Shown here piece after piece: positions 430-63,697 of a DNA stretch of 64,000 nucleotides. The stretch lies in IMG/VR virus record IMGVR_UViG_3300029922_000001, positions 186,001 to 250,000 of that record. One strand, 5' to 3'. Under the pieces are notes generated by a model that ran no database searches, had not been told where the DNA came from, and saw nothing but the letters and a program-made list of their open reading frames with translations. The stretch's first letter is position 1; every line of letters starts with the position of its first letter. Both the position numbers and the translations under genes were made by a program.

Positions 430-445
430 ATTGTATAATTTAAGT

Positions 446-1456
446 ATGCAAAATAGAAAATTTGATCCAGATAGAATTATTGATTATAATGTAGACTATT
501 ACACTATATTAGGCTTGAAGAGAGATGACTTTCCTAAAGACACAAGCCCAAATTCTAAGAGAAAAATTGCCGATTTGCTTGATCGTGCCTACAGAGAAAG
601 TGCAATCATTTGTCATCCTGATAATGGTGGCACAGAAGAAGACTTTAAGAGACTTATTAGGGCACACACCGTTCTTAGTGACCATTTAATGCGTAAAATG
701 TATGATAGTGGCGGTACATATAGACCAAGAACGATAGAAGATGGTACCAGTGATTGGGAAATTGACTGGGATAAGTTAGGAAACTATAGAAAAGGTACTA
801 CAGCAGATACTATTGGATATGGTTTATTTGCCATCGTATGTGACATCATTGACGAATTGAATTTAATTCCAGCATTTTACCCATCTGAGCCTTATCACTC
901 TTATAATTGGGATTTTGTTATTCTTAAAAAAGAAATTAAAGCAATTATCAATGGTAATCTCGTTAAATCTCCTGAAATTCCCAAATTAGCTATTGCTGTC
1001 GTACCAGATGAAGAAGAAGTTTTACGACTTACAGATAGTAGTAAAATTGCAACATCATTGCCATTTAAAATTTATATATATATCCCTCGTAAAAGTATTC
1101 AGCCATTGAGAGCAAATGACGAAGAAATTAAAGGAAATAGTCGCTCATACACTATGAAAGGTCATATGAAAGCTATTACATATTCTGATATAGATTTAGT
1201 AGAAACAACGCAACTTTCAGTTGCTGAAGATTATCTTCGTAATAATTTGATTCATGATTTGGAAAAGTATCGTAATGGAACGCTTGAAAAAGAACAACAA
1301 AAGAAAGATACTGAAGCTAAACGTACCACTTGGATGGACACTGAGCAAATCAAACAAATGGATCAGAACTTATTGAAGGCAATTTTACAGACAAAGGTTT
1401 ACACATTTAAACCTGATCCTACTAAATCTGAGTTTTTACAAAAAATTCCAGATTAA
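446..1456 (+). CDS. J-domain (DnaJ-like) protein with novel C-terminal region
   Basis: YYTILGL...ICHPDNGGTEEDFKRLIRAHTVLSD J-domain with HPD motif; start moved to ATG 446, 6 nt after TATAAT (434-439). Confidence 0.85.
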   Translation: MQNRKFDPDRIIDYNVDYYTILGLKRDDFPKDTSPNSKRKIADLLDRAYRESAIICHPDNGGTEEDFKRLIRAHTVLSDHLMRKMYDSGGTYRPRTIEDGTSDWEIDWDKLGNYRKGTTADTIGYGLFAIVCDIIDELNLIPAFYPSEPYHSYNWDFVILKKEIKAIINGNLVKSPEIPKLAIAVVPDEEEVLRLTDSSKIATSLPFKIYIYIPRKSIQPLRANDEEIKGNSRSYTMKGHMKAITYSDIDLVETTQLSVAEDYLRNNLIHDLEKYRNGTLEKEQQKKDTEAKRTTWMDTEQIKQMDQNLLKAILQTKVYTFKPDPTKSEFLQKIPD

Positions 1457-1538
1457 TCATCATGTGGTTGTTAAAAGGGATAAAAAACATATTCTTATTA
1501 ATGACTGGTAATCGTCCCGTCCACCAGGAGGAATTATA

Positions 1539-2060
1539 TTGGCACAACGACATATATATATTTTAGACACTTGTGTATTGCTACACGATCCTAAATCTTT
1601 ATTCAAATTCCAGAACAATGATGTTTATTTACCTTTAGCCGTCATTGATGATCTTGACGACCAAAAGGCTCGTAAAGAAGCTGTTGCTGCGTCCGCAAGA
1701 GAGGTTTTTAGACAACTAAAACCTTTGAATTTGGATCAAATAGGAGATGAAGGCATACCCCTTAATAAAGAAGGTGGTAAATTGTTTATCTATAATCATG
1801 ATAAACAAAGCGAAACCCCTAACATTACACGCATGAATTCAGATAATGCATTAATTGTCTGCTGTCTTGTGTTGCAAGCTAAATTCCCAGATCAAAAGGT
1901 AACTATTGTTACAAAAGATACAGGATTGAGAGTCAGAGCAGCAGCTTATGGTTGTCTTACTGAAAACTATCGTTCCGATCTAATTGAAGATGGAATATAT
2001 TCTGGTGTCAGATATATTACTACAACTTTGATCCCAACTGAAGCTAAGGTTGAAGTTTAA
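1539..2060 (+). CDS. PIN domain (N-terminal half of PhoH2-type PIN-PhoH protein)
   Basis: YILDTCVLLHDP, DNALI, TKDTGLRVRA PIN motifs; AGGAGG RBS upstream; same frame as the PhoH ORF. Confidence 0.9.
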   Translation: MAQRHIYILDTCVLLHDPKSLFKFQNNDVYLPLAVIDDLDDQKARKEAVAASAREVFRQLKPLNLDQIGDEGIPLNKEGGKLFIYNHDKQSETPNITRMNSDNALIVCCLVLQAKFPDQKVTIVTKDTGLRVRAAAYGCLTENYRSDLIEDGIYSGVRYITTTLIPTEAKVEV

Positions 2061-2096
2061 TCTATCAATAAAAAACTTAAAGTAAAATTAGACAAC

Positions 2097-3935: not shown

Positions 3936-3984
3936 TTTTTATACACTTTATAGAAAATAAATCTTTAAAGTGTATAATTGAATT

Positions 3985-6534
3985 ATGGCAATTGGTGTTA
4001 ATTGGGTAGTTTATAATAATAGCGCGAATGTGGGCACTAATCCTACAATTGTAGATTATATTAATTTTACAACAGACTCTCCCTTACCCACAAGTACTAC
4101 ATGGTCTACACCAGTGTCTTTTGGTTTTCAAGCAGTTAGTGCGAATCTTAGTAATGTCAATCTTTGGGCAAATAAAAACATTATTGATAGAAATACGTTA
4201 AAATTTATTGATATGTCTCCTAAGCTGTCTGCACCAGCAGGGTCGGTAACATTAAATTTTGGCGGTTCAGGTTCTTTGACTGGATCTTATTTTTACGCTG
4301 TTACTTTTGTGACCGCAACAGGTGAAACAAACTTGGGTGGAATTAGCAGTATTAGTCTTACAGCACAACAAGTTAATATATCAGCTATTCAGATTGATTC
4401 ATCTGGTTTAGCTATTGCAAGAAATATATATAGAACCACTGCTGGTGGATCAACTTATCATTATTTAACAACGATTGCAGACAACACAACTACTACGTTT
4501 ACAGATAACATTCCTGACTCGAATCTTCCTACAATTGATTCTACAACAATTAGTAATACCACAGGATTGAATTTTTATAAGCTTAAAGCTTTAGATTTAG
4601 ATGCACCATATATTTTTCAAGTAGATTATGCAACTTCGGCTGTATATCCATTTTTTGAAACAGGTAATGTAGATCAATATGCAACATTGGGGACTCCTGT
4701 CACAGCGGCTAGTTTTATTATTGATGGTATTACCATTTCTACATCAATAACAGGCAGTAAAATTATATTACTTAAAAATCAAGGTTTTCCAGGTGTACAC
4801 GATCCAATTACTAATGGTGTTTATGTTCTAAATCATGGTTCTGGAACGTATACACTTACCAGACACCCTTTCTTTAGTACACATTTTAATTATTTAACTG
4901 ATGTTAAGATACAAGTGAATGGTGGAACTACGAACGCTGATACGTTTTGGGCGTTATCATTCTGTGCTGTTGATCAATTTTCACCACCATCCCCAAGTGC
5001 TAGTTTTAATCCTTTAAATATGGAATTTATTGCTTCCAGTTTATCGTCTGCCGCAAATGCGATCAGTGTTTATGCGTATCAACTAAGAAAGCCAACAGAA
5101 GCTTATGTTCCATATCCTACTTGCTCTATTAATATTGAAACGAATTTAACAACTGATAATTTAAGTGATTTATATACTGTTAATCTTCCATTGCGCCAAC
5201 AAGGTGTTAATTTAAGTAATAATGATGAAATTATTCTTTCTGGTCAAACTAATACTATACAAAATGGGTCTTATTTGGTAACGAATGTTAATTCCATTAA
5301 TCAAACTTGTAATTTGTCTAGAAAAACATCTACTAGTGAATTTTTAGCACCTGGTTTTAGTTTGATTTCAGGCGAAGGTGTAAATAAAGGTTTGTCAAGT
5401 TGCTTGTTTGCTTCTTGTGTTCCTCAAGAATATTTAGTGGCTAATTTACGTTTAACTAGTGCGGAAAATGCATTAACAGGTGGCAGTTATACTCCAAATG
5501 ATTTAGTGTACAATACTGCATTAATTGGCTGGAATAGTGTTTCGGTTTGTTATCAATATGACACCACAACGGTTGCTTCTAGTTTCACAGGTCAAAATTC
5601 ATTTATATTGGTCACTTCCGAACCATATGGCGGTTATTATGTACGTGTTGGATCATCTGCTATATTTAAACAGCATAATCCTTATCCTTTATGGCACATG
5701 GTAGTGAAATATGTATACACTCAAAGTGGTGTATACACTCGCACTGATCAAGTGTCTTCATTTACTTCAGGTAGCGTTACTATACCAGTAGGCTATACAG
5801 TAAGTTACCTTAATGATAAGGTGGTAGATCCTCTAGGTAATTCTACTAATCCATTTAGGGTGTCTTTAAACACATTTAATCATTATGAAGCAGTACAATA
5901 CACTCCAGTATCAGGCGATACAATTGCACCACCATCTCCTGCTATTCCAGGCTTTCCAAATGCTTTTGTATTAACAACAACCAATCCACCAGAGTTTAAC
6001 TTCGTACAATGGGCGGCTACCGCAACACCTACAGCAAGTGAAATCAATACTACATTTACAATTTACTATGTTGAGTCATCAACATTAGATCAAAAACAAT
6101 TTTACATACCATATAGCAGCACAGTATTAAAAACTGAAGGTGCGTATTTATTTAATCCTATATATGATTTTAGATACGTAACCTATTATGATGGAACCAA
6201 CTATTATTGGTTTACATGGGAAATAAATACAATGACAGATAGCACTACTATTTGGCATCCGTTTTTTGTGTTCCGCAATGACGTTTTTGGTTTTACTTGT
6301 AAAACTTTATACCCTTCGGATTACGTTGATATATCTGATGTTTTTGGAAATCCTTTGATGTTGAATTTTTGGAATTATGCTCCTATTATTTCTGATAATG
6401 CTTTAACAAATGGCACGTTTAGCATGGACGTAAATCAAAAATCATACTCAGGAAGGTATTTAATGAGCTATCAACAGCCACCAAATGGCAATTATCACTT
6501 AACATTAAACGCAACTTTAAATAATTCTATTTAA
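3985..6534 (+). CDS. putative virion structural protein (beta-rich, Thr/Ser-rich)
   Basis: 849 aa; contains a module also present twice in the 27242 fibre gene. Confidence 0.6.
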   Translation: MAIGVNWVVYNNSANVGTNPTIVDYINFTTDSPLPTSTTWSTPVSFGFQAVSANLSNVNLWANKNIIDRNTLKFIDMSPKLSAPAGSVTLNFGGSGSLTGSYFYAVTFVTATGETNLGGISSISLTAQQVNISAIQIDSSGLAIARNIYRTTAGGSTYHYLTTIADNTTTTFTDNIPDSNLPTIDSTTISNTTGLNFYKLKALDLDAPYIFQVDYATSAVYPFFETGNVDQYATLGTPVTAASFIIDGITISTSITGSKIILLKNQGFPGVHDPITNGVYVLNHGSGTYTLTRHPFFSTHFNYLTDVKIQVNGGTTNADTFWALSFCAVDQFSPPSPSASFNPLNMEFIASSLSSAANAISVYAYQLRKPTEAYVPYPTCSINIETNLTTDNLSDLYTVNLPLRQQGVNLSNNDEIILSGQTNTIQNGSYLVTNVNSINQTCNLSRKTSTSEFLAPGFSLISGEGVNKGLSSCLFASCVPQEYLVANLRLTSAENALTGGSYTPNDLVYNTALIGWNSVSVCYQYDTTTVASSFTGQNSFILVTSEPYGGYYVRVGSSAIFKQHNPYPLWHMVVKYVYTQSGVYTRTDQVSSFTSGSVTIPVGYTVSYLNDKVVDPLGNSTNPFRVSLNTFNHYEAVQYTPVSGDTIAPPSPAIPGFPNAFVLTTTNPPEFNFVQWAATATPTASEINTTFTIYYVESSTLDQKQFYIPYSSTVLKTEGAYLFNPIYDFRYVTYYDGTNYYWFTWEINTMTDSTTIWHPFFVFRNDVFGFTCKTLYPSDYVDISDVFGNPLMLNFWNYAPIISDNALTNGTFSMDVNQKSYSGRYLMSYQQPPNGNYHLTLNATLNNSI

Positions 6535-36150: not shown

Positions 36151-36192
36151 AATATAAGTATACGCCTCATGTAATGATATTTCCTTGATTTA

Positions 36193-43401: not shown

Positions 43402-43983
43402 CTATAGGAAATCTTCGATAGTAATATCTTTACCATCGAAGTTGGATCTTAGTTTCTTTAACGCTTTTTGAGTTGTTTTGTAAACCTTATTAACTTCCCA
43501 TCCTAATTGTTCGGCAATATCTGAAGCCTTTTCTCTTTCGCTATATGTGGCAAGCAAGACTAATTTTTCATCATCAGTAAGAGTGTTTAAAGCCTCTTTA
43601 AGAACTAATTTAATGGTGATAAGGTCTAATTCCTCATGAGCATTAGAAGAGTGTTCTAATGGCAATTCTACGTATGCAGGAATAGGCTCATTAGAGTTGT
43701 GAGGTATGTGCATTAAACCGGTTTCACCACGCAAATGCTTTCTGACAGCATTGTATGCTTTTACCCATGCAAACGTAATAAACTTAACGCCTTTAGATTC
43801 GTCATATTTTCTATGGGCATCAAGAATACCAAGCTGGGCGTGTTGAAATGCATCCTTATAATCTTCAGACTTTGGATCTGATTTAAACTTAGATGTAATT
43901 TCGTGTGCCAAAGAAGTGTAATCTTTTAGGACTTGATTTTCTTTGTCTGTGTTTTCTTCGTTTATATTTAATGTCTTTAGCAT
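43402..43983 (-). CDS. sigma-70 family RNA polymerase sigma factor (group 3/4-like)
   Basis: DAFQHAQLGILDAHRKYDESKGVKFITFA region 2; ASDIAEQLGWEVNKV HTH region 4. Confidence 0.88.
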   Translation of the reverse strand: MLKTLNINEENTDKENQVLKDYTSLAHEITSKFKSDPKSEDYKDAFQHAQLGILDAHRKYDESKGVKFITFAWVKAYNAVRKHLRGETGLMHIPHNSNEPIPAYVELPLEHSSNAHEELDLITIKLVLKEALNTLTDDEKLVLLATYSEREKASDIAEQLGWEVNKVYKTTQKALKKLRSNFDGKDITIEDFL

Positions 43984-45252: not shown

Positions 45253-45572
45253 GGCGTTTTAGGTTTGATTGCAAAGTATATTCCACCATCTGCTTGAAAA
45301 GAAGTCCAACCATCTAAAACACTAGACTGATCTATACCACCACATTTAATATTGAATCCAAATGTGGTTTTTTTACTTCTTATAATTAAGAATGTTTCAT
45401 TTTGTTCATTGGTTCTTAATGAAATATCTTGTAAGATTTCATACTCGTTTTTAAATTTTTTATTCACAATTTTAATAAAACTTTTTCTTAGATCAACGAT
45501 AAAGCCGTTTTTGTATTTAGCTTTATCGTTGACTAGCTGTTCCCAAAATTCTAAATTCTTAATTAAATACAT
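45249..45572 (-). CDS. hypothetical protein
   Basis: ATG 6 nt after TATAAT. Confidence 0.65.
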   Translation of the reverse strand: MYLIKNLEFWEQLVNDKAKYKNGFIVDLRKSFIKIVNKKFKNEYEILQDISLRTNEQNETFLIIRSKKTTFGFNIKCGGIDQSSVLDGWTSFQADGGIYFAIKPKTP

Positions 45573-45579
45573 GCATACA

Positions 45580-45981
45580 TTATACAATAGGTTTGTTAAT
45601 ATATTGATACAGATGATTTAATAGCCACGCCGCAATACGATATCCGTCAACTTCAGGATCATAACCAGCTTGTTTGCAAGCCACTACCAAATTGTAACCA
45701 TTCATGGGATCACCTTGTAAATCGTCATCTAAAATATCTACTTGCTCCCAAAAATCCTTATCTTCTTGAGTGTATTCATCTCCATCAGGTGGATTTGGTA
45801 AAGGTTTGGCGGTAATAACATAAGATGGATCATTCATTCGAACTAAACCTAACTCACCTTCATACCATCCATAGTCTGCTGAATCATAAGATTCAGTAGC
45901 CACATATAAATAATAACCAGGAAGGACTTCGGATTCATCATCTCTTACTGGTTTTGCTTCGGTCAAACATTGCATACACAT
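45580..45981 (-). CDS. hypothetical protein
   Basis: 133 aa; ATG 6 nt after TATAAT. Confidence 0.7.
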   Translation of the reverse strand: MCMQCLTEAKPVRDDESEVLPGYYLYVATESYDSADYGWYEGELGLVRMNDPSYVITAKPLPNPPDGDEYTQEDKDFWEQVDILDDDLQGDPMNGYNLVVACKQAGYDPEVDGYRIAAWLLNHLYQYINKPIV

Positions 45982-45996
45982 GCCTGTATTATAGCA

Positions 45997-46545
45997 TTAA
46001 TAATGGGTAATAGATCGTTTTTCTAGTTCTTTTTCGATCATTGGATAAATCGTTTCAAGAGTTTTTCTGTGTTCTACTAAAACCGGGTTATAAGAGACTT
46101 CATATTTACAAAGAAAGTCTACGATTGCATTATCTACTTCAATTGATTTTTTTAGATCATGTAATCTATTGTCATTTTCAAATTTATTATTAGGATTTCT
46201 GGTAAGTAGAATATTGTAATTATCAAATTCATTGAATAATTCTAAAATGAAATTATTCCAAGCCTTTTTTGGCTTGGGATTATAAAAAATACCAAGTAAG
46301 ATAGGAGAATCAGTAATAACAATATCCACTTGTCCATGCGGTTGCATTTGTCTTTGAATTTGAGTTCCTGTAACATAAGCTTGGTTTTTAATTGTTTTTT
46401 CATCCTGATCATAGACTAAATCTTTGGCAAATTCCCTAACTAATTCAACATTATAACTATTTAATTTTAATTCATAAAATAGACCAGCAGCGAGCGTACT
46501 TTTTCCACAGCTTGGTCCTCCGAAGAAGTTTATTATGAGAGACAT
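45997..46545 (-). CDS. NadR/AAA_28-like P-loop kinase/ATPase
   Basis: NFFGGPSCGKST, ELVREFAKDL, ITDSPILL; start at ATG 46545. Confidence 0.8.
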   Translation of the reverse strand: MSLIINFFGGPSCGKSTLAAGLFYELKLNSYNVELVREFAKDLVYDQDEKTIKNQAYVTGTQIQRQMQPHGQVDIVITDSPILLGIFYNPKPKKAWNNFILELFNEFDNYNILLTRNPNNKFENDNRLHDLKKSIEVDNAIVDFLCKYEVSYNPVLVEHRKTLETIYPMIEKELEKRSITHY

Positions 46546-46551
46546 ACTTTT

Positions 46552-46573
46552 ATTGTACAGCTTGTGGTATAGT
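46552..46573. promoter_or_regulatory. back-to-back -10 elements driving two divergent leaderless genes
   Basis: TACAAT (minus, 46552-46557) and TATAGT (plus, 46568-46573), each exactly 6 nt from an ATG. Confidence 0.7.
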
Positions 46574-46579
46574 TGATAC

Positions 46580-48103
46580 ATGAAAGCACCCGTGCTAGAC
46601 CTAATTAATTACGATCCCTCTAAAGATTATCTAATCCCGCCAGATAAGTTGGCAATGTGGGCAAAACACAAAATGAATGTTTTGTTCATTGGTGAGACTG
46701 GTGTAGGAAAAACCGCAATTATCATGTCGTTTTTTGAACAACTTGGATTGCGCTGCAAATATTTTTCTGCACCTACGCTTGAACCATATATTGACATTAT
46801 TGGTGTTCCTCGTGAACATACAGACGCAGATGGTAATACGTTCCTAGAGTTTATTCAAAAAAGAGAATTTGCTAAGGATGAAATTGATGTTGTGTTTATT
46901 GATGAATTCAATAGGGCACGTCCTGAAGTTCGTAATGCTGTTATGGAGTTCGTGCAATTTAAGAGTATCAACGGTAAGAAATACCACAATCTTAAAATGG
47001 TTTGGGCTGCAATTAACCCTTACGATGAAGATGGCACTTATGATGTTGATCGTCTTGACCCTGCTATGATGGGAAGATTCCCTATTAAGCATTTCGTAGA
47101 TAATCGTCCTTGTCCAGCTTATTTTGAAGCTGTATTTGGTAAATATATAGCGGATACTTCTATTGAGTGGTGGACTAAGTTGACAACAGATCATCCTAAT
47201 ACTTTGGCTTTGGTTCCACCTAGAACATTACATGATGCAGTTAGTTGGTATTTGCTTGGTGGAGACGTTAGAGACGTGATGCCAAAAGACACTAATATTA
47301 ATTGCACTGAATTTGTAACAACTCTCGCGGCTGATCCAATTGAGGTTCAGGTTGAAAAACTCTTTACTAGACAAGATCAAAATGCTACTAAAGCATTTTT
47401 GAATACTGCTAATACATTGTTCAGAGCTAAAAGTATTATTGAATCAAAAGAAGAGTGGCTAAACTACTTCCTTCCTTTGGCACGTCCTGAAGTAATTTCG
47501 GGTTGGGCTAGAGAATCAGAAGTGGTGTTAGATAATCTAGTTCGTAATATCAATATTGGTCCTAATCGAAGTATCATTGATGATTTTATCAATTTTCAAC
47601 CTGATCTTAAACCAAAAATTAAGCAAGCTTGGGTAACAACACCATTTATTCAAGATCCAGCTTATAGAGTTTTGACAGAAAAGATTGTTTTTGATATCAA
47701 TCTAGCTTGTTCGGAATTTTATGTTTCTGTACCAACAGGTAAAGTTAATTATTCTTTCACAGAACGATTAATTGCCCTCAAGGTAAAAACTAATAATTTC
47801 GAATATAAGAATGATCAGGATAAAGCAGGAACATGGACGGCACTTTGTGCTTATGTTCCAGGTGATCTTTCGGAAGATGATGCTAAATTCGGTCTGTATG
47901 TTATGGATACATTGGCATCTGCCAAACTTGGCTTCTTGGCTGAATTTGATAAATCTGTTTCTTTGTTGAATACTTTTGCTGCAACCCTGTATTTTAAGCA
48001 TGGTTATACTCCTGAACAGATTTGGAAAATCTGTCCACACGTTGAACAAAGTAATAAGTCTTTGACTTCAGCTAAGCATACTAAAAGTATGTTTTTGAAA
48101 TAA
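46580..48103 (+). CDS. MoxR-like AAA+ ATPase
   Basis: GETGVGKT Walker A, VFIDEFNRA Walker B, AAINP, LDPAMMGRF. Confidence 0.85.
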   Translation: MKAPVLDLINYDPSKDYLIPPDKLAMWAKHKMNVLFIGETGVGKTAIIMSFFEQLGLRCKYFSAPTLEPYIDIIGVPREHTDADGNTFLEFIQKREFAKDEIDVVFIDEFNRARPEVRNAVMEFVQFKSINGKKYHNLKMVWAAINPYDEDGTYDVDRLDPAMMGRFPIKHFVDNRPCPAYFEAVFGKYIADTSIEWWTKLTTDHPNTLALVPPRTLHDAVSWYLLGGDVRDVMPKDTNINCTEFVTTLAADPIEVQVEKLFTRQDQNATKAFLNTANTLFRAKSIIESKEEWLNYFLPLARPEVISGWARESEVVLDNLVRNINIGPNRSIIDDFINFQPDLKPKIKQAWVTTPFIQDPAYRVLTEKIVFDINLACSEFYVSVPTGKVNYSFTERLIALKVKTNNFEYKNDQDKAGTWTALCAYVPGDLSEDDAKFGLYVMDTLASAKLGFLAEFDKSVSLLNTFAATLYFKHGYTPEQIWKICPHVEQSNKSLTSAKHTKSMFLK

Positions 48104-51506: not shown

Positions 51507-52122
51507 ATAATAGTTTAGATAGGGCAATTGCTCTCATTCGATGAAAAGCTGCTGAAGATGCTAGAATTTTTTCCATAGGTGATGACTCTGGATTTTCAGC
51601 AATAGCTTGTAAATCTAGTACACTTAAATCATTAGCGTCACAGTTGTCATCATCTTCTTCTAATAAAGCTTCCCATTTTGCTTTTAATGCATTGTATTCT
51701 GATTCTAATTGAGACTGTGCAAACATAGAAAGGATTTGATCATCAATAGGATCACCAGGTTGAGCTAATTCTTCAATAGGATACGTTTTGATGTTTTCAA
51801 TATCATCTTTTGTAAATGTTCCAGTACTCGCCGCACCAGTTGTGAGGGTAAGTGTGTTTTTAGGATCTGTAATGGTGATTGTTGTTGTAGTATTTGGTGT
51901 CATGGAGTTTAAAGTTTTATTTGCGGCATCATAATCGGTAATGAATCTTTGTTTGAGTTCTTCAACTGCGTTTTTTTCATAGTCCCAACTAAGTGGATCT
52001 TCTGGTAATTTGTAGTGTGCCGATTTTGACCATAAAACGTTCCAACCATAACAGAATCTTTCTAAAAAAGATAAGTGTTTGAAAGAGTGAACATTATAAT
52101 GCACAGTTTTAATTTCGTTCAT
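51499..52122 (-). CDS. hypothetical protein
   Basis: ATG 52122 lies 6 nt after TATAAT. Confidence 0.7.
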   Translation of the reverse strand: MNEIKTVHYNVHSFKHLSFLERFCYGWNVLWSKSAHYKLPEDPLSWDYEKNAVEELKQRFITDYDAANKTLNSMTPNTTTTITITDPKNTLTLTTGAASTGTFTKDDIENIKTYPIEELAQPGDPIDDQILSMFAQSQLESEYNALKAKWEALLEEDDDNCDANDLSVLDLQAIAENPESSPMEKILASSAAFHRMRAIALSKLLFN

Positions 52123-52160
52123 GTCCTTATTATACATATCAATTAGGGTATAATAGAGAC

Positions 52161-52442
52161 ATGGTTAATGACGAAGTAATCCAAAAAAAAATCACCGGAC
52201 GAAGACTCTCAACAGTTTTCACTGAAATTAAAACAATCAAGAAGGATCTTGGCAACAAGTTCATTCGTGAACAACGCACACTCGTTAATGAGTATATTCG
52301 ATTGGCACAATCTGCTTTTGATCGTGAAGATTGGGGTAAGGCTCGTCTTTGGTCTGACGAAGCACTAGATATTGCTAAAACCAATCCTAATGGTAGAGCA
52401 TGGATGTCTCGAAAGAACGATAGGAACACAGTAACCAAGTAG
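52161..52442 (+). CDS. hypothetical protein
   Basis: 93 aa; ATG 6 nt after TATAAT. Confidence 0.7.
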   Translation: MVNDEVIQKKITGRRLSTVFTEIKTIKKDLGNKFIREQRTLVNEYIRLAQSAFDREDWGKARLWSDEALDIAKTNPNGRAWMSRKNDRNTVTK

Positions 52443-52790: not shown

Positions 52791-53018
52791 TTATGATACC
52801 TGACTTTGTGGAATCCATACTTCAACTTTCGCAATACCAGCAGTAGGTTTTGAACAATTTCTAATGATTTCAGCGCATTCTTCAACTGTATCAACTTGAT
52901 AAGAATTTTCAGGGAAAAATGTTCTTGCTGAATTAGGAGTAAATATATCAACACAATACTTATTTTCTAGGGATCTATCTCCACTCATGGCTTTTTCGAG
53001 AATTTTTTCTTTAGTCAT
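52791..53018 (-). CDS. hypothetical protein
   Basis: 75 aa; ATG 5 nt after TATAAT. Confidence 0.65.
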   Translation of the reverse strand: MTKEKILEKAMSGDRSLENKYCVDIFTPNSARTFFPENSYQVDTVEECAEIIRNCSKPTAGIAKVEVWIPQSQVS

Positions 53019-53024
53019 GACTTA

Positions 53025-53252
53025 TTATAAATCAACTTTACACTTATTGTTAGTGCAATGACCTAAAGCGTCTTTTAATAGATAATTCTTAGCACCACGA
53101 TCTTCATCACTCATAAGGCGATAATTTAATTTATCAATGCCTTCGTAACGAAATTTGAATTCGCTAATGATAGTTTCCATGAGTGTTTCAGCCATATCTG
53201 CTGATTCTTTTTCGTCTGTAAATAATGGGATGTCGATATGCAATCTGAACAT
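53025..53252 (-). CDS. hypothetical protein
   Basis: 75 aa; GGAG RBS, follows the tRNA. Confidence 0.65.
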   Translation of the reverse strand: MFRLHIDIPLFTDEKESADMAETLMETIISEFKFRYEGIDKLNYRLMSDEDRGAKNYLLKDALGHCTNNKCKVDL

Positions 53253-53507: not shown

Positions 53508-53744
53508 TTATTGATATTCTACTGTTACTGTTCCGCTAACATCAACTTCTTTATGGTTATCTTTAGTGCAAAAATAATAAATACCACTTGAGAGATGAAC
53601 TTCTCCATCAGAAGTATATTGATTGAGAATCTTGCCATCACTTGAATAAACCGTAACTTTGGAGTCAGTGTAATCTGCTCCACAACCGCACATGATTAAC
53701 GAAAATAAGGATAAGGTAAGAATAGAGATTGTAATTCTTTTCAT
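53508..53744 (-). CDS. putative lipoprotein
   Basis: signal peptide ending IMCGC. Confidence 0.65.
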   Translation of the reverse strand: MKRITISILTLSLFSLIMCGCGADYTDSKVTVYSSDGKILNQYTSDGEVHLSSGIYYFCTKDNHKEVDVSGTVTVEYQ

Positions 53745-54163
53745 GGTTTTATTATACCATATTTTGGCATACGAATCATATCTATGTAACCGCCCATTTC
53801 TGCACGAGTTTTGCCGGTTTGGTTTATGAAATTTTCAACTACAAATCCATGACGATTATACCATTCGATAAGTTGTTGTTCATTTAATTTAGGTATTCCA
53901 TGATCATATAAAGGAAGTGGTTTAACTTCTAACCATAAGGTTACACCATGACGATCTGCGTAATAGGAAATTTCATCTAGAGTTCTAGAAGCAAAGCCTT
54001 TAAATTCATGATCTGATTTGATGTAATCAATATAAAGTATTTTATTATTTCTGCCTATCAATAGTTCAACTTCAATAAGACCAAAATAAATAAAATGCTG
54101 TGATGTTTTTGGTGTAACATTATATGAACATTTCATATCAAGAAGCATTTCAGAGACGCCCAT
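53741..54163 (-). CDS. GNAT-family acetyltransferase
   Basis: IDYIKS..EFKGFASRTL, LWLEV, LIEWYNRHGF. Confidence 0.7.
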   Translation of the reverse strand: MGVSEMLLDMKCSYNVTPKTSQHFIYFGLIEVELLIGRNNKILYIDYIKSDHEFKGFASRTLDEISYYADRHGVTLWLEVKPLPLYDHGIPKLNEQQLIEWYNRHGFVVENFINQTGKTRAEMGGYIDMIRMPKYGIIKP

Positions 54164-54548: not shown

Positions 54549-54833
54549 TTATGCAAGGGCAGGAGATTTTGTTTTAATAACGTTCAAACAGTCGATGTAA
54601 CCCATTGCTCTTTCTTTAATTTCTTTATTATCAAAGATTAGAACTGTAGGTACGGTAGTGATAAAAAATGATTCTGCGGCTTCCATGTTTTCTTCGATAT
54701 CACAAATAGCAACATTCATATCGTCTGTAATTTGCTTTTTAAGATTTTGGCATGGCGCACACCAAGGGGCAGAAAATAAGACTATGCTTTGCGAAGCTGT
54801 GTCTTTAATTTGTTCGTATGTAATTGATTTCAT
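54549..54833 (-). CDS. thioredoxin-like protein
   Basis: FSAPWCAPC, TTVPT cis-Pro loop. Confidence 0.85.
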   Translation of the reverse strand: MKSITYEQIKDTASQSIVLFSAPWCAPCQNLKKQITDDMNVAICDIEENMEAAESFFITTVPTVLIFDNKEIKERAMGYIDCLNVIKTKSPALA

Positions 54834-54905
54834 AGGTATATATTATGATAATTCAAATGAACCCAAATATAACCAAAAAGGTTAGAACTCGTCGGAGTGA
54901 ATCAG

Positions 54906-55002: not shown

Positions 55003-55257
55003 TTACTGTAGTGTAGCCAAGAATTCATCAATAGCTTCGCTAAATGATGCAAACTCAACTCTGGAACGATCAGGGTACAAAACAGACCAAGTTTCACCAT
55101 CCATCTTTTCAATTAAAGATTTTTTACCTGAAACCTTCAATCCATATTGCAAAACTTGAGCAATAGGCATCTTTAACAGTGAGTTGTGATAATAAGGTTC
55201 TGGGGCAGGAATTGGTGGAACGACGTTAGATTCTTTTACTGGTTTTTCTTTTTTCAT
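55003..55257 (-). CDS. hypothetical protein
   Basis: 84 aa; GGAG RBS. Confidence 0.65.
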   Translation of the reverse strand: MKKEKPVKESNVVPPIPAPEPYYHNSLLKMPIAQVLQYGLKVSGKKSLIEKMDGETWSVLYPDRSRVEFASFSEAIDEFLATLQ

Positions 55258-55277
55258 ATTAATCTCCTAATAATGAA

Positions 55278-55625
55278 TTATACAGTTAATTCAGTATTAG
55301 GAGATTTGATTTTGGATTTTTGATATAAATCTTCGTAGTGTTTATCAATTTCTTGTTTAAAAGTCTTGAAATTCAAACCATGTTCAGGTGCCCATGATCT
55401 ACTACCACAAGAAGTAACGACATCTAAATCAATAAGCATTTTGCCCACTGTGCTATCAGAAATATAAGCATCATGATTTTCTAACTCTTCTAAAAGTTCG
55501 AATAAATCTTGAAGATCATATTCAACATCGTTAATAGTAATCCAATAACGATAAGCTATATATGGTTCAAGTCTTGGTTTACTAATAGGCAAATCGTTAG
55601 TCAAATCTAAGGTTAATTGTGGCAT
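55278..55625 (-). CDS. hypothetical protein (paralogue of the next gene)
   Basis: YWITINDVEYDLQDLFELL; ATG 6 nt after TATACT. Confidence 0.7.
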   Translation of the reverse strand: MPQLTLDLTNDLPISKPRLEPYIAYRYWITINDVEYDLQDLFELLEELENHDAYISDSTVGKMLIDLDVVTSCGSRSWAPEHGLNFKTFKQEIDKHYEDLYQKSKIKSPNTELTV

Positions 55626-55643
55626 AATCTGAGTATACCTTAA

Positions 55644-57328: not shown

Positions 57329-57692
57329 TTAATTTGCCAAGGAAAAAATCGTGAATTATTTCAGTGTCACTTTCTGCGTCTTCGTCAGTTGTTTTAGTGT
57401 CACCCTCTTCATCTTCGTCACCTACTTCAATTGTTGCAACTATAACATTATTACTATCACTAACTATTGCAACCAAACCGTTAATTAAACCTAGTGCTGA
57501 AATGTAAAACTTGTCATCAATACAAGTAAGACCACAAGTTAAACCATCTAATTTTTCTACTGTTTCGGTATCTATTGGATGTTTAGTTAACAAAACCTTT
57601 GATACTATTTCTGGGGCAACTTCAACATATTTATTTAATAATGAAATGATAGATTCTAAATTGTCACTTCCAAGTCCACTGTACATACTCAT
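57306..57692 (-). CDS. hypothetical protein
   Basis: 128 aa; ATG 5 nt after TACAAT. Confidence 0.7.
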   Translation of the reverse strand: MSMYSGLGSDNLESIISLLNKYVEVAPEIVSKVLLTKHPIDTETVEKLDGLTCGLTCIDDKFYISALGLINGLVAIVSDSNNVIVATIEVGDEDEEGDTKTTDEDAESDTEIIHDFFLGKLSDFYIEE

Positions 57693-57708
57693 GCTTTATT
57701 GTAAAGCA

Positions 57709-58089: not shown

Positions 58090-58446
58090 TTAATCAGTAT
58101 TAACTTTTAGAATTAATCTTGTTAAATCTGCGGTGTCTGCTTTAATGCCATAAAATTCTTGTAAGTCTAATGCCCTATTCCATGCGGAATTGTATGGATT
58201 TTCAGGTTTACTAACTTCAAATTCCTTTTGAATTGCCACAATTTCTTCATCTAGTCTAAATTGTGCGTTAGTTAAATATTTATAAATCCACTTTACCGTT
58301 CCATATTCTTTTTGACGTTCAACATGCACTGTTGCGTGTGCTAAAATAGCATCAGTAAAATTGTGATTTTTTCTAACAACGATCACTGGATTGAAAGCAA
58401 AAGCTTGACATGCTCCAGGTAGCCAAGACACACGGATAATTTTCAT
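58090..58446 (-). CDS. zincin-like small protein with degenerate HExxH
   Basis: AILAHATVHVERQKEYG..WIYKYL. Confidence 0.5.
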   Translation of the reverse strand: MKIIRVSWLPGACQAFAFNPVIVVRKNHNFTDAILAHATVHVERQKEYGTVKWIYKYLTNAQFRLDEEIVAIQKEFEVSKPENPYNSAWNRALDLQEFYGIKADTADLTRLILKVNTD

Positions 58447-58655
58447 ATGATTATTATAGCTTGTTTTGTTGAGCTAAATCAAGTAGTATTTTTTGACGTT
58501 CTAATGGTGCAGAGACATAATCTGTTTTGATTAATTTACTGGTTTGCGTACTAGATAGACGATCTAATATACCAATCATGCTATTTAATAATATAATTTT
58601 TCTATTTTTTCTTTATCGCAATTTACAATAATTTTATCCAGTCTATCCAATCTAT

Positions 58656-59527: not shown

Positions 59528-59720
59528 TGTCTAGATCCACTACTTTAGTTAAATTAGGTAATAACTCTACTAGCTTACGATAAGCTTTAGTGTTAATATG
59601 AAATTTTTCAGTATCTGTGTATATTCTAAACTGACTATCATTGAACGAAGTTACAATACCTACAATTTTATCTGTATTAACATGGTAAATATATGGTCCA
59701 TTTTTATATGTGATATACAT
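59520..59720 (-). CDS. hypothetical protein
   Basis: 66 aa; ATG 6 nt after TATAAT. Confidence 0.65.
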   Translation of the reverse strand: MYITYKNGPYIYHVNTDKIVGIVTSFNDSQFRIYTDTEKFHINTKAYRKLVELLPNLTKVVDLDNE

Positions 59721-59887
59721 GCTTACATTATAACACTATTTGACTATAAAATACAACACTTTAGGTGGATTACGGTAATATTTAGCTAAAGTTGCTTGAC
59801 CCTCCAGTGTTGCTAATGCACGATCAATAATAGCTTCTCTATCTTTCATATCTTGAATAATTGCATTAATATTTTTCGTGTTACTCG

Positions 59888-60014: not shown

Positions 60015-60281
60015 TTAAGACGCTTTGACCTTTTTGTGAGTGTATTGTTCGGCGTTAATTAATTGTGAAATATTAGGATCTGAGCTAAATTCAATATCAT
60101 TCTTAATGATATTGAGGACTTCTTCACCATTTGGCATAGAAATTAATTTCTCTATTAAAGAAAATAATTTTCTATTTTGTTCCATTTGTGCGTCAAGTAC
60201 ATCTTTATTAACCATAATTTTGGGTGTAAAATTTGGTATATATTTATAACTGCATGGCATTCTTTCTGATCGTATTGGCAT
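60015..60281 (-). CDS. hypothetical protein
   Basis: 88-aa ORF. Confidence 0.55.
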   Translation of the reverse strand: MPIRSERMPCSYKYIPNFTPKIMVNKDVLDAQMEQNRKLFSLIEKLISMPNGEEVLNIIKNDIEFSSDPNISQLINAEQYTHKKVKAS

Positions 60282-60287
60282 AGATTA

Positions 60288-60656
60288 TTATAGTCTAATT
60301 CTAAAAGAAACTGATGGATCAACAATAATTACAGGTTCTGGATCATAATAACCAACAATAGGACCGTTTTCATAATAAGCTACCCCACCACCTTCATACC
60401 AAAACATGGTGACATCACCAATAACGTAGGTTGTAACCCAATGGCATCTAGGTCTTTCACCAATGCGCCAAACACGAGTAGGAGTGAATCTATAATGTTC
60501 AAATCTACGAATTCTAGAGTGTTCTGGTCTGCGATTTTGTTCTTGTCTAATTGCGGGTCTGCGTGATTCTTGATGACCACCACGACGCTGAGCTAAACCA
60601 CTAACAGAAAGAGCTAGAATAGAGCAAAGAGCAATAAGTTTTAGATTTTGTTTCAT
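60288..60656 (-). CDS. putative secreted protein
   Basis: N-terminal signal peptide (LIALCSILALSVSGLA), Arg-rich segment. Confidence 0.65.
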   Translation of the reverse strand: MKQNLKLIALCSILALSVSGLAQRRGGHQESRRPAIRQEQNRRPEHSRIRRFEHYRFTPTRVWRIGERPRCHWVTTYVIGDVTMFWYEGGGVAYYENGPIVGYYDPEPVIIVDPSVSFRIRL

Positions 60657-61647: not shown

Positions 61648-61869
61648 TTAGGTTTTTAGTGCAAATTCCTCATTTGTAGATACTAATTTTCTGATATATT
61701 CGGAAAGAACGTCTTCTACACCATTTGAACCATAGTCGGCAGTAAAAGCATAATCACCACCATCAATTCCTGAATTTTCGTATTTAACCAGTAGGCGCTT
61801 ATGTGGTCTTTCATAAATACCAACAGCACGTCCACATACCATAGTTACATATAATCTTTGATTTTCCAT
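61648..61869 (-). CDS. hypothetical protein
   Basis: ATG 61869 lies 6 nt after TATAAT. Confidence 0.65.
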   Translation of the reverse strand: MENQRLYVTMVCGRAVGIYERPHKRLLVKYENSGIDGGDYAFTADYGSNGVEDVLSEYIRKLVSTNEEFALKT

Positions 61870-61876
61870 GTGATTA

Positions 61877-62224
61877 TTATAGCACAAAATCCGCCGCAAC
61901 TTCTATGTGTTTTACAGTACTCACCTCACTTGCTTCTTTATTGTATTGATCAATTTTATTAGCCATACCAACAAGGCATTCTGCTATTTCTCTTAAATCT
62001 TCTGTTTCTATAAACGGCATATGTATTTCTGATCTACAATCCCCTTCTTCGCCACAAAACACAAACGTCGTGAATAAATTAGGACCTCCTGGGAATTGAC
62101 GATTTGGATTGATATCTATTGTGTCAATATAAAAACATTGTTTAGCGCCTTCTCTATCCGTATTTTCCGCACCAACTACTCTATATGTTTTTGTTTTAAC
62201 TTCACGATCAATCATTTTATTCAT
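61877..62224 (-). CDS. hypothetical protein
   Basis: 115-aa ORF. Confidence 0.65.
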   Translation of the reverse strand: MNKMIDREVKTKTYRVVGAENTDREGAKQCFYIDTIDINPNRQFPGGPNLFTTFVFCGEEGDCRSEIHMPFIETEDLREIAECLVGMANKIDQYNKEASEVSTVKHIEVAADFVL

Positions 62225-62513: not shown

Positions 62514-62801
62514 TTATTTAATTAATGATTTAGCAGAAACTTCAACTAATTCCACTAAAGATTTTTCACTCAAATATCCACTATTAAATAATTTAACAGA
62601 TTGAGCAAGAAATTCAGATTCTTCCAATACCATTTTTTCTGTTAATGGCACAGAATTTCGTAATTTTTCAGCAAGTAAAATTATGGTTTTTCGCAATTCT
62701 ACATCTAAATGTTTTCCGTTTTCTAATTTAAATTTAAGTAAATTTAAAGTTTCATTCAATTCGTAATTAATTTCTTCTAGGGTTTCAACAGTGTGTTTCA
62801 T
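62514..62801 (-). CDS. hypothetical protein
   Basis: 95-aa helical ORF. Confidence 0.65.
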   Translation of the reverse strand: MKHTVETLEEINYELNETLNLLKFKLENGKHLDVELRKTIILLAEKLRNSVPLTEKMVLEESEFLAQSVKLFNSGYLSEKSLVELVEVSAKSLIK

Positions 62802-62940
62802 ATCAAATAATAATTTAATAATTTATATATTCTATACCTTCGGTTTGTTAATGAGTTTTGTCTGCAAATCATATTATATTTAAAATACTAGTAATTTTAC
62901 TTGTTTATGGTATATAAATAAAATTATTCTTATCACAATC

Positions 62941-63429
62941 CTAAGTACTATCTTTAGTTGGATTAACACTAAATAATTCTTTTCTTATTTCCATCCACAA
63001 TTTTCCTAATTGATTTTGTCCATCTTTATTAGGTCCCCATCCCCAAAAATTATCACGCCAACTACACTCTACGATTGCATTATCACCACTAGCTTTAAGT
63101 TTTTTCATAACATACGGATGTTGATTTGCTTTTTCTTTTAAAATTTCTTTCATAATATCAAGTTTAACTTCATCCCAATCAACACGTCTTATATTTTTAT
63201 TTTCCTCAGCCCATTTGAAACAAGCATGTGCTGAAGGCATTTTTCTAATCATATTTTTGATTTTTGGATCGTCAAATTTCTCAGAATGATAAGCGTGTTC
63301 TGATGTTGGATAAATCTTACCCTTCCAATATAGTTGAAATGCAGAAAAATTAGAGAAAATATAATAATCACGTTCATAACAATCAAGGATTGGTAAGTCG
63401 TAATTCGCTAAATCGTGATATTCAATCAT
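62941..63429 (-). CDS. NADAR (YbiA/DUF1768) family hydrolase
   Basis: FSNF, YPTSEHAYHSEKF, DNFWGWG, GQNQLGKLWMEIR; start at ATG 63429. Confidence 0.9.
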   Translation of the reverse strand: MIEYHDLANYDLPILDCYERDYYIFSNFSAFQLYWKGKIYPTSEHAYHSEKFDDPKIKNMIRKMPSAHACFKWAEENKNIRRVDWDEVKLDIMKEILKEKANQHPYVMKKLKASGDNAIVECSWRDNFWGWGPNKDGQNQLGKLWMEIRKELFSVNPTKDST

Positions 63430-63436
63430 GCTATTA

Positions 63437-63697
63437 TTATAAGTAATCTTCATGATATTCTACTACTGGAGTGTTTGATTTAGCTTTAGACTCTTCTTCA
63501 GCTAACATGCCCTTTTGATAAGCCTCATTAAGCAATCTTAAATGTCTAGCTTCATGATCAGTAATCTCTCCATCCATTTGTGAAATTGAATTTATATCTT
63601 GTTCAACATACATCATCTTAGGAGATTCGTTAACGTCCTGAAATAATTTAAGATCGTGTGTTTTGGTTGTATTTTCGTTTATGATATTTGGTTTCAT
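63437..63697 (-). CDS. hypothetical protein
   Basis: 86 aa; ATG 5 nt after CATAAT. Confidence 0.6.
   Translation of the reverse strand: MKPNIINENTTKTHDLKLFQDVNESPKMMYVEQDINSISQMDGEITDHEARHLRLLNEAYQKGMLAEEESKAKSNTPVVEYHEDYL

What the first reader, a model, noticed from the sequence alone, without database searches (positions are those of the whole stretch)
434..63697. Window-wide leaderless gene architecture: TATAAT-N5/6-ATG
Seen: a -10 hexamer (TATAAT/TATACT/TACAAT/TATAGT/CATAAT) sits 5-6 nt before the ATG, with almost no room for a leader, at 446, 3985, 36150, 38402, 45572, 45981, 46545, 46580, 48148, 52122, 52161, 52482, 53018, 53744, 54833, 55625, 57692, 58446, 59720, 61869, 63429 and 63697. 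Two divergent pairs (46545/46580 and 52122/52161) have only 34-38 bp between start codons. Inference: most early/middle genes are single leaderless transcripts starting at the A of AUG, so the host translates leaderless mRNA efficiently. Several supplied ORF starts are therefore too long.
Basis: partly seen in the sequence, partly recalled or inferred. Interest (0 to 1): 0.62.

Follow-up and report, generated by a model that had tools for sequence, protein, structure and literature searches.

The report
Leaderless promoter-at-start-codon architecture, huge phage
About 40% of the genes of this 441-kb uncultured phage have a promoter -10 box exactly 5-6 bases before their ATG, so they are most likely expressed as leaderless mRNAs; this strategy is already known from Thermus phage phiYS40 and from Deinococcus, but is seen here on an unusually large scale.

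Summary
Twenty of the 22 listed sites have a TATAAT-like hexamer exactly 5-6 nt before an ATG; 52482 and 54833 have it at 8 nt. The window holds 11 TATAAT-N6-ATG against 2.1 expected from shuffles.

The window is part of a 441,498-bp IMG/VR phage record. Genome-wide, 22% of first ATGs carry the hexamer at gap 6 and 10% at gap 5, against under 1% at internal ATGs. That is about 213-251 of 573 genes.

Independent signs of transcription starting at the A of ATG:
- The base at -1 is a pyrimidine in 90% of these genes, against 40% in SD-led genes.
- The motif precedes ATG almost exclusively.
- SD-like motifs appear mostly where the same promoter box lies 21 nt or more upstream.
- Seven divergent pairs have only 26-38 bp between start codons.

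There are at least three promoter classes. One is a 97-copy phage-specific box, ATCCCCAAY-N10-RAGGTATACT-N6-ATG, outside the window.

No phage RNA polymerase was found. The phage encodes three sigma-like proteins and an IF3. Relatives show the same peak.

No RNA data could be obtained and the host is unknown. This is a new member of a known kind (phiYS40, Deinococcus).

The parts
434..448 (+). -10 hexamer TATAAT, 6 nt, ATG (preceded by TG); true start of ORF listed from TTG 431
3973..3987 (+). TG-TATAAT, 6 nt, ATG of 849-aa gene
36148..36162 (-). TATACT, 6 nt, ATG of 139-aa gene; hexamer at the same distance in the closer relative L135
38391..38404 (+). TATAAT, 5 nt, ATG of DHH phosphoesterase; ortholog in L135 has TATAAT at 6 nt with diverged flanks
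43402..43983 (-). Phage sigma-70-family factor (regions 2 and 4 only, ECF-like), itself SD-led
45570..45584 (-). TG-TATAAT, 6 nt, ATG (ORF listed from TTG 45587)
45979..45993 (-). TATAAT, 6 nt, ATG of 133-aa gene
46543..46582 (.). Divergent pair: TACAAT-N6-ATG (46545, minus strand) and GGTATAGT-N6-ATG (46580, plus strand), 34 bp between start codons
48136..48150 (+). GGTATACT, 6 nt, ATG of VWA/metallopeptidase-like gene (class II)
52120..52163 (.). Divergent pair: TG-TATAAT-N6-ATG (52122, minus strand) and GGTATAAT-N6-ATG (52161, plus strand), 38 bp between start codons
52468..52484 (+). Ambiguous site: TATAAT lies 8 nt before ATG in an AT run; the gene itself is doubtful
53016..53029 (-). TATAAT, 5 nt, ATG
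53742..53756 (-). GGTATAAT, 6 nt, ATG; the promoter lies inside the 3' end of the upstream gene (4-nt overlap)
54831..54847 (-). Inexact site: CATAAT at 8 nt; a 2-mismatch TAATAT at 6 nt
55255..55282 (-). Internal control: TG-TATAAT 19 nt before ATG, with an AGGAG Shine-Dalgarno in the short leader
55623..55637 (-). GGTATACT, 6 nt, ATG (class II)
57690..57703 (-). TACAAT, 5 nt, ATG
58444..58458 (-). TATAAT, 6 nt, ATG
59718..59732 (-). TATAAT, 6 nt, ATG
60279..60292 (-).
61867..61881 (-). TATAAT, 6 nt, ATG (ORF listed from TTG 61899)
62799..62812 (-).
63427..63441 (-). TATAAT, 6 nt, ATG (ORF listed from ATG 63453)
63695..63708 (-). CATAAT, 5 nt, ATG

Best explanation
The hexamers are -10 elements of promoters read by the host RNA polymerase core. 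No phage polymerase was found, so the sigma is either the host primary sigma or one of the phage's sigma-like proteins. The elements are placed so that transcription starts on, or within one base of, the A of the ATG. The resulting mRNAs have no 5' leader and no Shine-Dalgarno sequence. They would be translated through recognition of a 5'-terminal AUG by ribosomes with initiator tRNA; that pathway is established for leaderless mRNAs elsewhere and is inferred here.

Genes that are not first behind such a promoter use ordinary SD motifs or start/stop overlap. About 37-44% of the 573 genes follow the leaderless plan.

At least three promoter classes share the geometry:
- Class I: ATCCCCAAY-N10-RAGGTATACT-N6-ATG. 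97 copies, all on one strand, at G000 354-441 kb.
- Class II: GGTATA(A/C)T-N6-ATG without the C box.
- Class III: (TG)TATAAT-N5/6-ATG, often TATAATAAR-N-Y-ATG.

The window holds classes II and III. What is shown: the motif, its positional precision, its correlates and its presence in relatives. What is inferred: the transcription start sites, which sigma reads which class, and the mode of translation.
For: 1. Position. The hexamer peaks at gap 6, then 5, about 25-35 times over internal-ATG controls and over shuffles. A 6-nt gap is the canonical distance from a -10 hexamer to +1.
2. The -1 base is C or T in 90% of these genes, against 40% in SD-led genes and 53% at internal ATGs. This holds in each class at gaps 5 and 6 but not at gap 7. 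It matches the known pyrimidine(-1)/purine(+1) preference of RNA polymerase (my own knowledge) and is not a known translation signal.
3. Start codon. The motif precedes 20.5% of candidate ATGs but only 5.1% of GTGs and 2.2% of TTGs. SD-led genes use GTG or TTG in 18%. After GGTATA[AC]T-N6 the next triplet is ATG in 120 of 211 copies; the next most frequent triplet occurs 8 times.
4. Internal control. GGTATA[AC]T lies 5-7 nt from a called gene start in 119 of 211 copies and 8-60 nt in only 19. The leaders of 21 nt or more mostly carry GGAG or AAGGA (window example 55257).
5. Class I has a second conserved box at -34 to -29, separated by a 16-nt spacer (+/-1) from the -10 hexamer. That is sigma-70-family promoter geometry. 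It precedes 77 genes whose proteins are unrelated (72 singletons by blastp), so it is kept by selection and not by gene duplication.
6. Seven divergent pairs have only 26-38 bp between ATGs, filled by two opposed hexamers.
7. The G000 257593 gene has a full TTGACA-17 bp-TATTAT-N6-ATG. Its ortholog in a relative keeps the TTGACA-17-TAAAAT promoter, 8 nt from the ATG.
8. The same gap-6 peak appears in three TerL-clade relatives, at 7-13% against under 2%. It is also present at orthologous genes of a closer relative despite diverged flanks.
9. No phage RNA polymerase beta, beta' or T7-type enzyme was found.
10. The same architecture is experimentally validated in D. radiodurans: TANNNT about 6-7 bp upstream of nearly one third of ORFs (PMC12340547). 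It is also reported for phiYS40 middle/late genes (PMC3594737).
Against:
- Canonical bipartite sigma-70 sites are not enriched (92 found, 92.4 expected).
- The canonical TGn extended -10 is not enriched (9% against 8%). How -35-less class II and III promoters recruit polymerase is therefore unexplained.
- In class I the RAGG just upstream of the hexamer looks like an SD at 12-nt spacing.
- In distant relatives only 4 of 16 orthologs of leaderless genes keep the motif.
- About 38 of the 251 calls are expected to be false.
- My gene calls are home-made.
Confidence: 0.8

Rival explanations
1. The leaderless geometry is right, but the class I promoters (ATCCCCAAY...GGTATACT), and perhaps class II, are read by a phage-encoded sigma-like factor or a phage activator and not by the host primary sigma alone. 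They would mark a temporal class of a sigma cascade. This rival concerns the polymerase specificity only, not the leaderless reading.
For: The phage encodes three sigma-like proteins, and its relatives carry a pair of them next to TerL. The class I -35-position box (TCCCCA) is unlike TTGACA. All 97 copies sit in one co-oriented block.
Against: The hexamer keeps T-12, A-11 and T-7, typical of primary-sigma -10 elements, whereas the phage sigmas look ECF-like (region 2 plus region 4). A co-oriented array of about 100 small genes looks like an early region, which must be read before phage proteins exist unless a factor is injected. No assignment is possible from sequence.
Confidence: 0.35
2. The motif is a translation signal inside longer polycistronic mRNAs. 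It would be a non-canonical ribosome-binding element, AU-rich and combined in classes I and II with RAGG as a long-spaced Shine-Dalgarno. The real promoters would lie elsewhere.
For: The motif occupies roughly the place of an RBS. RAGG or AGGAGG directly precedes the hexamer in class I and at G000 257593. Spacers are tight and terminators are not enriched, so read-through transcripts are likely.
Against: - In this genome SD 4-mers peak 6-10 nt from the start; 12 nt is rare.
- Class III has no purine-rich element at all.
- The invariant positions (T1, A2, T6) are those of a -10 element, not of any known rRNA pairing.
- The -1 pyrimidine, the -34/-29 box at a 16-nt spacer, the ATG-only rule and the appearance of true SDs when the box lies further upstream all point to transcription.
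- In D. radiodurans the same motif could not be replaced by an RBS.
Confidence: 0.07
3. The motif is an RNA processing site. A phage or host endoribonuclease would cut long precursors just 5' of each AUG and so make leaderless mRNAs after transcription.
For: The motif is sharply positioned relative to the AUG. The genes are co-oriented and densely packed without terminators.
Against: No nuclease was linked to it. The motif matches the -10 consensus and, in class I, has a partner box at promoter spacing. Divergent pairs carry the motif on both strands back to back, which suits promoters and not a precursor RNA.
Confidence: 0.04
4. The signal is a chance or compositional artefact of an AT-rich genome, or of TAA stop codons near gene junctions.
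For: The genome has 34% G+C. TATAAT contains TAA. A small excess of TATAAT directly abutting the ATG (gap 0) probably reflects stop/start junctions.
Against: None of 100 shuffles reached the observed count. Control hexamers are flat. The enrichment over internal ATGs is 25-35-fold. Only 21% of leaderless genes have an upstream gene ending within 12 nt.
Confidence: 0.01

Closest known systems
Thermus thermophilus phage phiYS40 middle/late genes (Sevostyanova et al. 2007, as summarised in PMC3594737)
   Same: A large lytic phage without its own RNA polymerase. Most middle/late mRNAs lack a leader. From my own recollection of the 2007 paper, which is not held, their promoters have a single -10-type consensus.
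   Different: - phiYS40 is about 152 kb (my own knowledge) and infects a host phylum in which ORF-adjacent -10 boxes are common. Here the host is unknown and the genome is at least 441 kb with 34% G+C.
- This phage has at least three promoter classes, including a bipartite phage-specific one with 97 copies.
- phiYS40 is reported to raise host IF2 and lower IF3. This phage encodes an IF3 of its own.
ORF-adjacent -10 motif of Deinococcus-Thermus (PMC12340547); GeneMarkS-2 'group C' genomes (PMC8153819)
   Same: TANNNT about 6-7 bp upstream of the ORF in about one third of genes, coexisting with GGAG-type RBS genes. It is experimentally shown to be a -10 region that gives leaderless mRNA. The phage shows the same two-signal pattern.
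   Different: Those are cellular genomes; this is a virus. The preferred form here is TATAAT or TATACT at 5-6 nt, often with GG directly upstream and sometimes a C-rich -35-position box.
Phage lambda cI mRNA from PRM and other single leaderless phage genes
   Same: An mRNA starting at the A of AUG and translated without an SD (my own knowledge; Shean and Gottesman 1992 is cited).
   Different: Those are isolated genes. Here there are hundreds per genome.
Jumbo phages phiKZ and AR9
   Same: Very large phage genomes with dedicated, highly conserved promoter motifs repeated many times.
   Different: phiKZ has no leaderless transcript and 5' UTRs mostly of 31-40 nt (PMC8244752). AR9 has UTRs of 26-491 nt (PMC5312081). 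Both encode their own multisubunit RNA polymerases, which were not found here.

Membership tests
Leaderless expression from an ORF-adjacent -10 promoter (Deinococcus / phiYS40 type) | A TANNNT-type hexamer with sharp positional enrichment about 5-7 nt upstream of start codons | tested here: met
   22.4% at gap 6 and 9.6% at gap 5 of first ATGs, against under 1% at internal ATGs. Window shuffles: 11 found against 2.1 expected.
Leaderless expression from an ORF-adjacent -10 promoter (Deinococcus / phiYS40 type) | No Shine-Dalgarno between the promoter and the start; SD is used by other genes of the same genome | tested here: met
   Only 5-6 nt are available. About 156 other genes carry GGAG-type motifs 4-10 nt upstream. 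Most leaders of 21 nt or more behind the same box carry an SD-like motif.
Leaderless expression from an ORF-adjacent -10 promoter (Deinococcus / phiYS40 type) | Primary transcript 5' end at or within a few nt of the start codon | not testable with these tools
Indirect support: a pyrimidine at -1 in 90%.
Leaderless expression from an ORF-adjacent -10 promoter (Deinococcus / phiYS40 type) | A 5'-terminal AUG as start codon | tested here: met
   The motif precedes 20.5% of ATG candidates, 5.1% of GTG and 2.2% of TTG. SD-led genes use 18% GTG/TTG.
Leaderless expression from an ORF-adjacent -10 promoter (Deinococcus / phiYS40 type) | Leaderless mRNAs are actually translated in the host | not testable with these tools
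   The host is unknown. There are no proteomic or ribosome-profiling data.
Canonical bipartite sigma-70 promoter (TTGACA, 17 bp, TATAAT) | A -35 hexamer resembling TTGACA 16-18 bp upstream of the -10 | tested here: not met
   No information at -35 in classes II and III. Class I has TCCCCA instead. Bipartite sites: 92 found against 92.4 expected. Single exception at G000 257593.
Extended -10 (TGn) promoter | TG at -15/-14, one base before the hexamer | tested here: not met
   TGn occurs in 9% of class III sites against 8% of other TATAAT copies. Instead, G at -13 is enriched: GG in classes I and II, and TG abutting the hexamer in 17% against 4.5%.
phiYS40-type phage strategy | The phage lacks its own RNA polymerase and relies on the host core enzyme | tested here: met
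   No match to Rpb2_6, Rpb1_2 or the T7-type RNA_pol family. Divergent or unknown polymerases cannot be excluded, and the T7-type control rang nowhere.
phiYS40-type phage strategy | A shift of host IF2/IF3 balance in favour of leaderless translation | not testable with these tools
   Only relevant fact: the phage encodes a full-length IF3 and no IF1, IF2 or S21.

The most novel reading that the evidence does not exclude
The phage may use leaderless versus SD-led initiation as a programmed translational switch. Hundreds of small genes would be expressed as leaderless 5'-proximal cistrons of nested read-through transcripts, from back-to-back or in-gene promoters. The phage-encoded IF3, a factor known to discriminate against leaderless starts in E. 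coli, would later shift ribosomes to the SD-led replication and structural operons. The RAGG before class I hexamers could act as a weak long-spaced SD for the same ORFs when they lie inside read-through RNAs. This would be a virus-encoded control of the mode of translation initiation, in a host that may not itself favour leaderless mRNAs.
Probability: 0.15. Interest if true: 0.8.

Novelty: new member of a known kind. Interest (0 to 1): 0.55.

Why it matters
1. Annotation. Gene callers that know only SD models will misplace many of the roughly 220 starts. The motif gives single-base start predictions for hypothetical genes of a whole clade of huge phages.
2. Biology. Leaderless expression can dominate a very large phage genome outside the Thermus and actinobacterial systems where it has been described. 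It coexists here with phage sigma factors and a phage IF3, which gives a concrete, testable handle on why huge phages carry translation-initiation genes.
3. The 97-copy class I box is a ready-made promoter set for transcription studies and for recognising close relatives of this phage in metagenomes.

Tried and rejected
- Close DNA relatives in isolated phages: none by megablast. GyrA, the 1732-aa protein, TerL and DnaE hits are all below 50% identity.
- Single-protein locus search in IMG/VR found nothing. An alignment of TerL relatives was needed.
- Whole-record pattern counts on metagenome loci L022 and L025 were not possible because those records are not held. Relatives cannot be drawn for a virus record.
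- Host inference failed. DnaK is about 48% identical to many Clostridia and deep-branching. IF3 is 43% identical to a Micavibrio protein and 37% to Acetobacter, which is not decisive. The GMP reductase scan of genome contigs gave one irrelevant hit.
- Ortholog-level conservation in distant relatives (TerL 37-47% identical) is weak. 4 of 16 leaderless orthologs keep the motif, against 0 of 25 SD orthologs. The sample is too small to weigh.
- TAG recoding was considered because of two tRNA(CUA) genes and rejected. The standard code gives 90% coding density and TAG ends 50 genes.
- T4-late-type TATAAATA was considered for the gap-5 class (TATAATAAR). The sequence differs, and no gp55 search was made.
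- The original phiYS40 paper (PMC1885378) is not held. I relied on a review's summary and on my own recollection, marked as such.
Full report
WHAT THE WINDOW IS. The window is G000:C1:186001-250000 of a single 441,498-bp IMG/VR virus record, with 33.9% G+C and a CheckV completeness of 100%.
- The record has 24 tRNA genes, including two with a CUA anticodon, and a tmRNA.
- The window encodes GyrB, GyrA, DnaK, ThyX, a GMP-reductase-like enzyme and a sigma factor.
- Elsewhere the record encodes a DnaE-type polymerase, helicase, UvsX, RecJ, RNR and TerL.
- No isolated phage is close.
- TerL defines a large clade of uncultured huge phages with contigs up to 358 kb.

THE OBSERVATION. All 22 sites were read.
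- Twenty have a TATAAT-like hexamer ending exactly 5 or 6 nt before the ATG. 52482 and 54833 have the named hexamer at 8 nt.
- Both divergent pairs are as described, with 34 and 38 bp between start codons.
- In the window, TATAAT-N6-ATG occurs 11 times against 2.14 +/- 1.65 in dinucleotide-preserving shuffles. TATAMT-N5-Y-ATG occurs 14 times against 1.71.
- Genome-wide, the distance from TATAAT to the next ATG spikes at 5 and 6 nt (51 and 58, against roughly 3-22 at the other distances from 0 to 19). Control hexamers are flat.

GENOME-WIDE EXTENT. I made greedy hexamer-score gene calls: 573 genes covering 90% of the record.
- The hexamer (at most one mismatch, A2 and T6 fixed) sits at gap 6 before 22.4% of first ATGs and at gap 5 before 9.6%. 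At internal ATGs the figures are 0.66% and 0.90%.
- 251 genes have it at a candidate ATG, and 205 of these at the first in-frame ATG.
- About 38 would be expected by chance, so roughly 213 are real, or 37%.
- Another 156 or so genes have GGAG, GAGG or AGGA 4-10 nt upstream, so they are ordinary SD-led genes.
- Leaderless-type genes dominate 0-25 kb and 230-441 kb. The replication and structural block at 25-186 kb is mostly SD-led and operon-like.
- In the window, 26 of about 75 genes qualify, most of them between 44 and 64 kb.

ANATOMY: MORE THAN TATAAT. Aligning the sites separates three classes.
- Class I is AAATCCCCAAY-N10-RAGGTATACT-N6-ATG. It has 97 copies on the plus strand between G000 354 and 441 kb and one on the minus strand. 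In 75 of the plus-strand copies the ATG follows at exactly 6 nt. It heads 77 small genes (median 113 aa) whose products are unrelated to each other (72 singletons), so the box is not carried along by gene duplication.
- Class II is GGTATA(A/C)T-N6-ATG without the C box. Window examples: 46580, 48148, 52161, 53744, 55625.
- Class III is TATAAT-like with no upstream conservation except frequent TG abutting the hexamer. At gap 5 it is typically TATAATAAR-N-Y-ATG. Most window sites belong here.
- The canonical -35 is absent except in one gene. The canonical TGn extended -10 is not enriched. What is enriched is G at -13.

WHY THIS IS TRANSCRIPTION STARTING AT THE ATG.
1. Six nucleotides is the canonical distance from a -10 hexamer to +1.
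2. The base before the ATG is a pyrimidine in 90% of these genes (C 47%, T 43%). In SD-led genes it is 40%, and at internal ATGs 53%. This is true in every class at gaps 5 and 6. It fits the polymerase's preference for pyrimidine(-1)/purine(+1) (my own knowledge).
3. The motif is tied to ATG, preceding 20.5% of ATG candidates against 5.1% of GTG and 2.2% of TTG. SD-led genes use GTG or TTG in 18%. After GGTATA[AC]T-N6 the triplet is ATG in 120 of 211 copies.
4. When the same box lies further from a gene, an SD often appears in the leader. Examples are window 55257 with AGGAG, and G000 408742 and 409771. This is an internal control showing that the box is a promoter and that SD is dispensed with only at N5-7.
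5. Class I has a second box at promoter spacing.
6. Seven divergent pairs leave only 26-38 bp between ATGs. In the 26-bp cases this is exactly two opposed hexamers, two 6-nt spacers and 2 bp between them.
7. The PARP-like gene at G000 257593 has TTGACA-17-TATTAT-N6-ATG. The promoter (TTGACA-17-TAAAAT) is conserved in a relative, there 8 nt from the ATG.

TRANSCRIPT ARCHITECTURE.
- The median distance from the upstream same-strand gene is 29 nt. In 21% of cases the hexamer itself overlaps the upstream ORF or its stop codon.
- Intrinsic terminator-like sites are not enriched in 45-64 kb (10 found against 8.3 expected).
- Leaderless genes are often followed by SD-led or overlapping genes.
Leaderless first cistrons of short operons and/or nested read-through RNAs fit better. 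This is inferred.

WHO TRANSCRIBES AND TRANSLATES.
- No RNA polymerase beta, beta' or T7-type enzyme was detected.
- Three sigma-like genes exist: window 43402-43983 (regions 2 and 4), G000 59271-59876 (region 4), and a weak one at 56284-56937. Relatives keep a pair next to TerL.
- Which sigma reads which class cannot be told from sequence. The hexamer looks like a primary-sigma -10 element. The class I C box suggests a phage-specific factor.
- The phage encodes a full-length IF3 (176 aa, N and C domains) at G000 254486-255016, 4.5 kb beyond the window. It has no IF1, IF2 or S21. Its own GGTATAAT box lies 13 nt from its ATG.

RELATIVES.
- Three large clade members (TerL 37-47% identical, G+C 33-40%) show the same gap-6 peak at first ATGs: 7.1%, 7.2% and 13.4%, against 0.3-1.9% at internal ATGs.
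- Two contigs of a closer relative (IF3 73%, DnaK 80% identical) keep the hexamer at leaderless distance at orthologs of window 38402 and 36150 and of G000 255837, although the flanking sequence has diverged.
- In the distant relatives, ortholog-level retention is weak, at 4 of 16.

COMPARISON WITH WHAT IS KNOWN.
- In D. radiodurans a TANNNT motif about 6-7 bp upstream of nearly one third of ORFs was shown experimentally to be a -10 region that gives leaderless mRNAs (PMC12340547).
- GeneMarkS-2 recognises a whole group of such bacterial genomes (PMC8153819).
- Thermus phage phiYS40 makes most middle/late mRNAs leaderless and is reported to shift host IF2 and IF3 (PMC3594737).
- The studied jumbo phages phiKZ and AR9 have no leaderless transcripts.
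- I found no paper linking huge uncultured phages to leaderless architecture.
- The finding is therefore a new, very large-scale member of a known kind. It has its own promoter classes and a phage IF3 as distinctive extras.

LIMITS. The host is unknown. The gene calls are home-made. Another assembly carries the identical DnaK on a 521,591-bp contig, so the record may be incomplete.

Noticed in passing
G000:C1:354000-441498 (outside the window; loci L017-L021): An array of 97 copies of a roughly 30-bp box, ATCCCCAAY-N10-RAGGTATACT, all on the plus strand. 75 are followed by ATG at exactly 6 nt. They head unrelated small genes. 13 of 77 copies can form a CCCC/GGGG hairpin across the spacer. The record ends inside the array.
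   Followed up: yes
G000:C1:254486-255016 (-), locus L132:1495-2025: A phage-encoded full-length translation initiation factor IF3 (IF3_N plus IF3_C, 176 aa). The nearest homolog, 73% identical, is on an 11-kb contig of a related phage; the next is a Micavibrio IF3 at 43%. Its GGTATAAT box lies 13 nt from the ATG. No IF1, IF2 or S21 was found in the genome.
   Followed up: partly
window 43402-43983 (-); G000:C1:59271-59876 (+); G000:C1:56284-56937 (+): Three sigma-70-family-like genes. The pair upstream of TerL is syntenic in related huge phages, alongside the clamp loader, the DNA polymerase III beta subunit and RNR.
   Followed up: partly
G000:C1:172128-172200 and 353602-353673; tmRNA at 293574-293927: Two tRNAs with a CUA (amber-reading) anticodon and a tmRNA. 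The standard code still gives 90% coding density and TAG ends 50 genes, so there is no sign of genome-wide TAG recoding.
   Followed up: partly
window 59891-59993 (-): Rfam reports a 103-nt tRNA match (52.8 bits) that ARAGORN does not call. It could be a tRNA with an insertion or intron.
   Followed up: no
window 21757-26955 and 27242-32464 (+): Two adjacent giant ORFs (1732 and 1740 aa) lie in a block of higher G+C (about 41%). They share a 134-aa segment at 76% identity. The C-terminal 100-130 aa of the first matches hypothetical proteins of Synechococcus and Flavobacterium phages (phrog_17490). They are probably fibre or surface proteins.
   Followed up: partly
whole record: The identical DnaK is on record on a contig of 521,591 bp and a 99%-identical TerL on one of 295,442 bp. 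The true genome may therefore be larger than this 441-kb record, despite the 100% CheckV estimate.
   Followed up: no
G000:C1:257550-257595 (+) and L134:5070-5115 (-): The PARP-like gene (WGR plus PARP domains in the relative) has a full consensus promoter, TTGACA-17 bp-TATTAT, ending 6 nt before its ATG, with AGGAGG directly before the hexamer. The promoter is conserved in the relative, where the -10 is TAAAAT and lies 8 nt from the ATG.
   Followed up: partly
G000:C1:49528-53163 (+); TerL homologs P0010-P0012, P0025, P0032, P0041-P0043: Several clade TerL genes are 300-350 aa longer and carry LAGLIDADG/intein domains. The 1211-aa RNR large subunit of this phage also looks interrupted.
   Followed up: no
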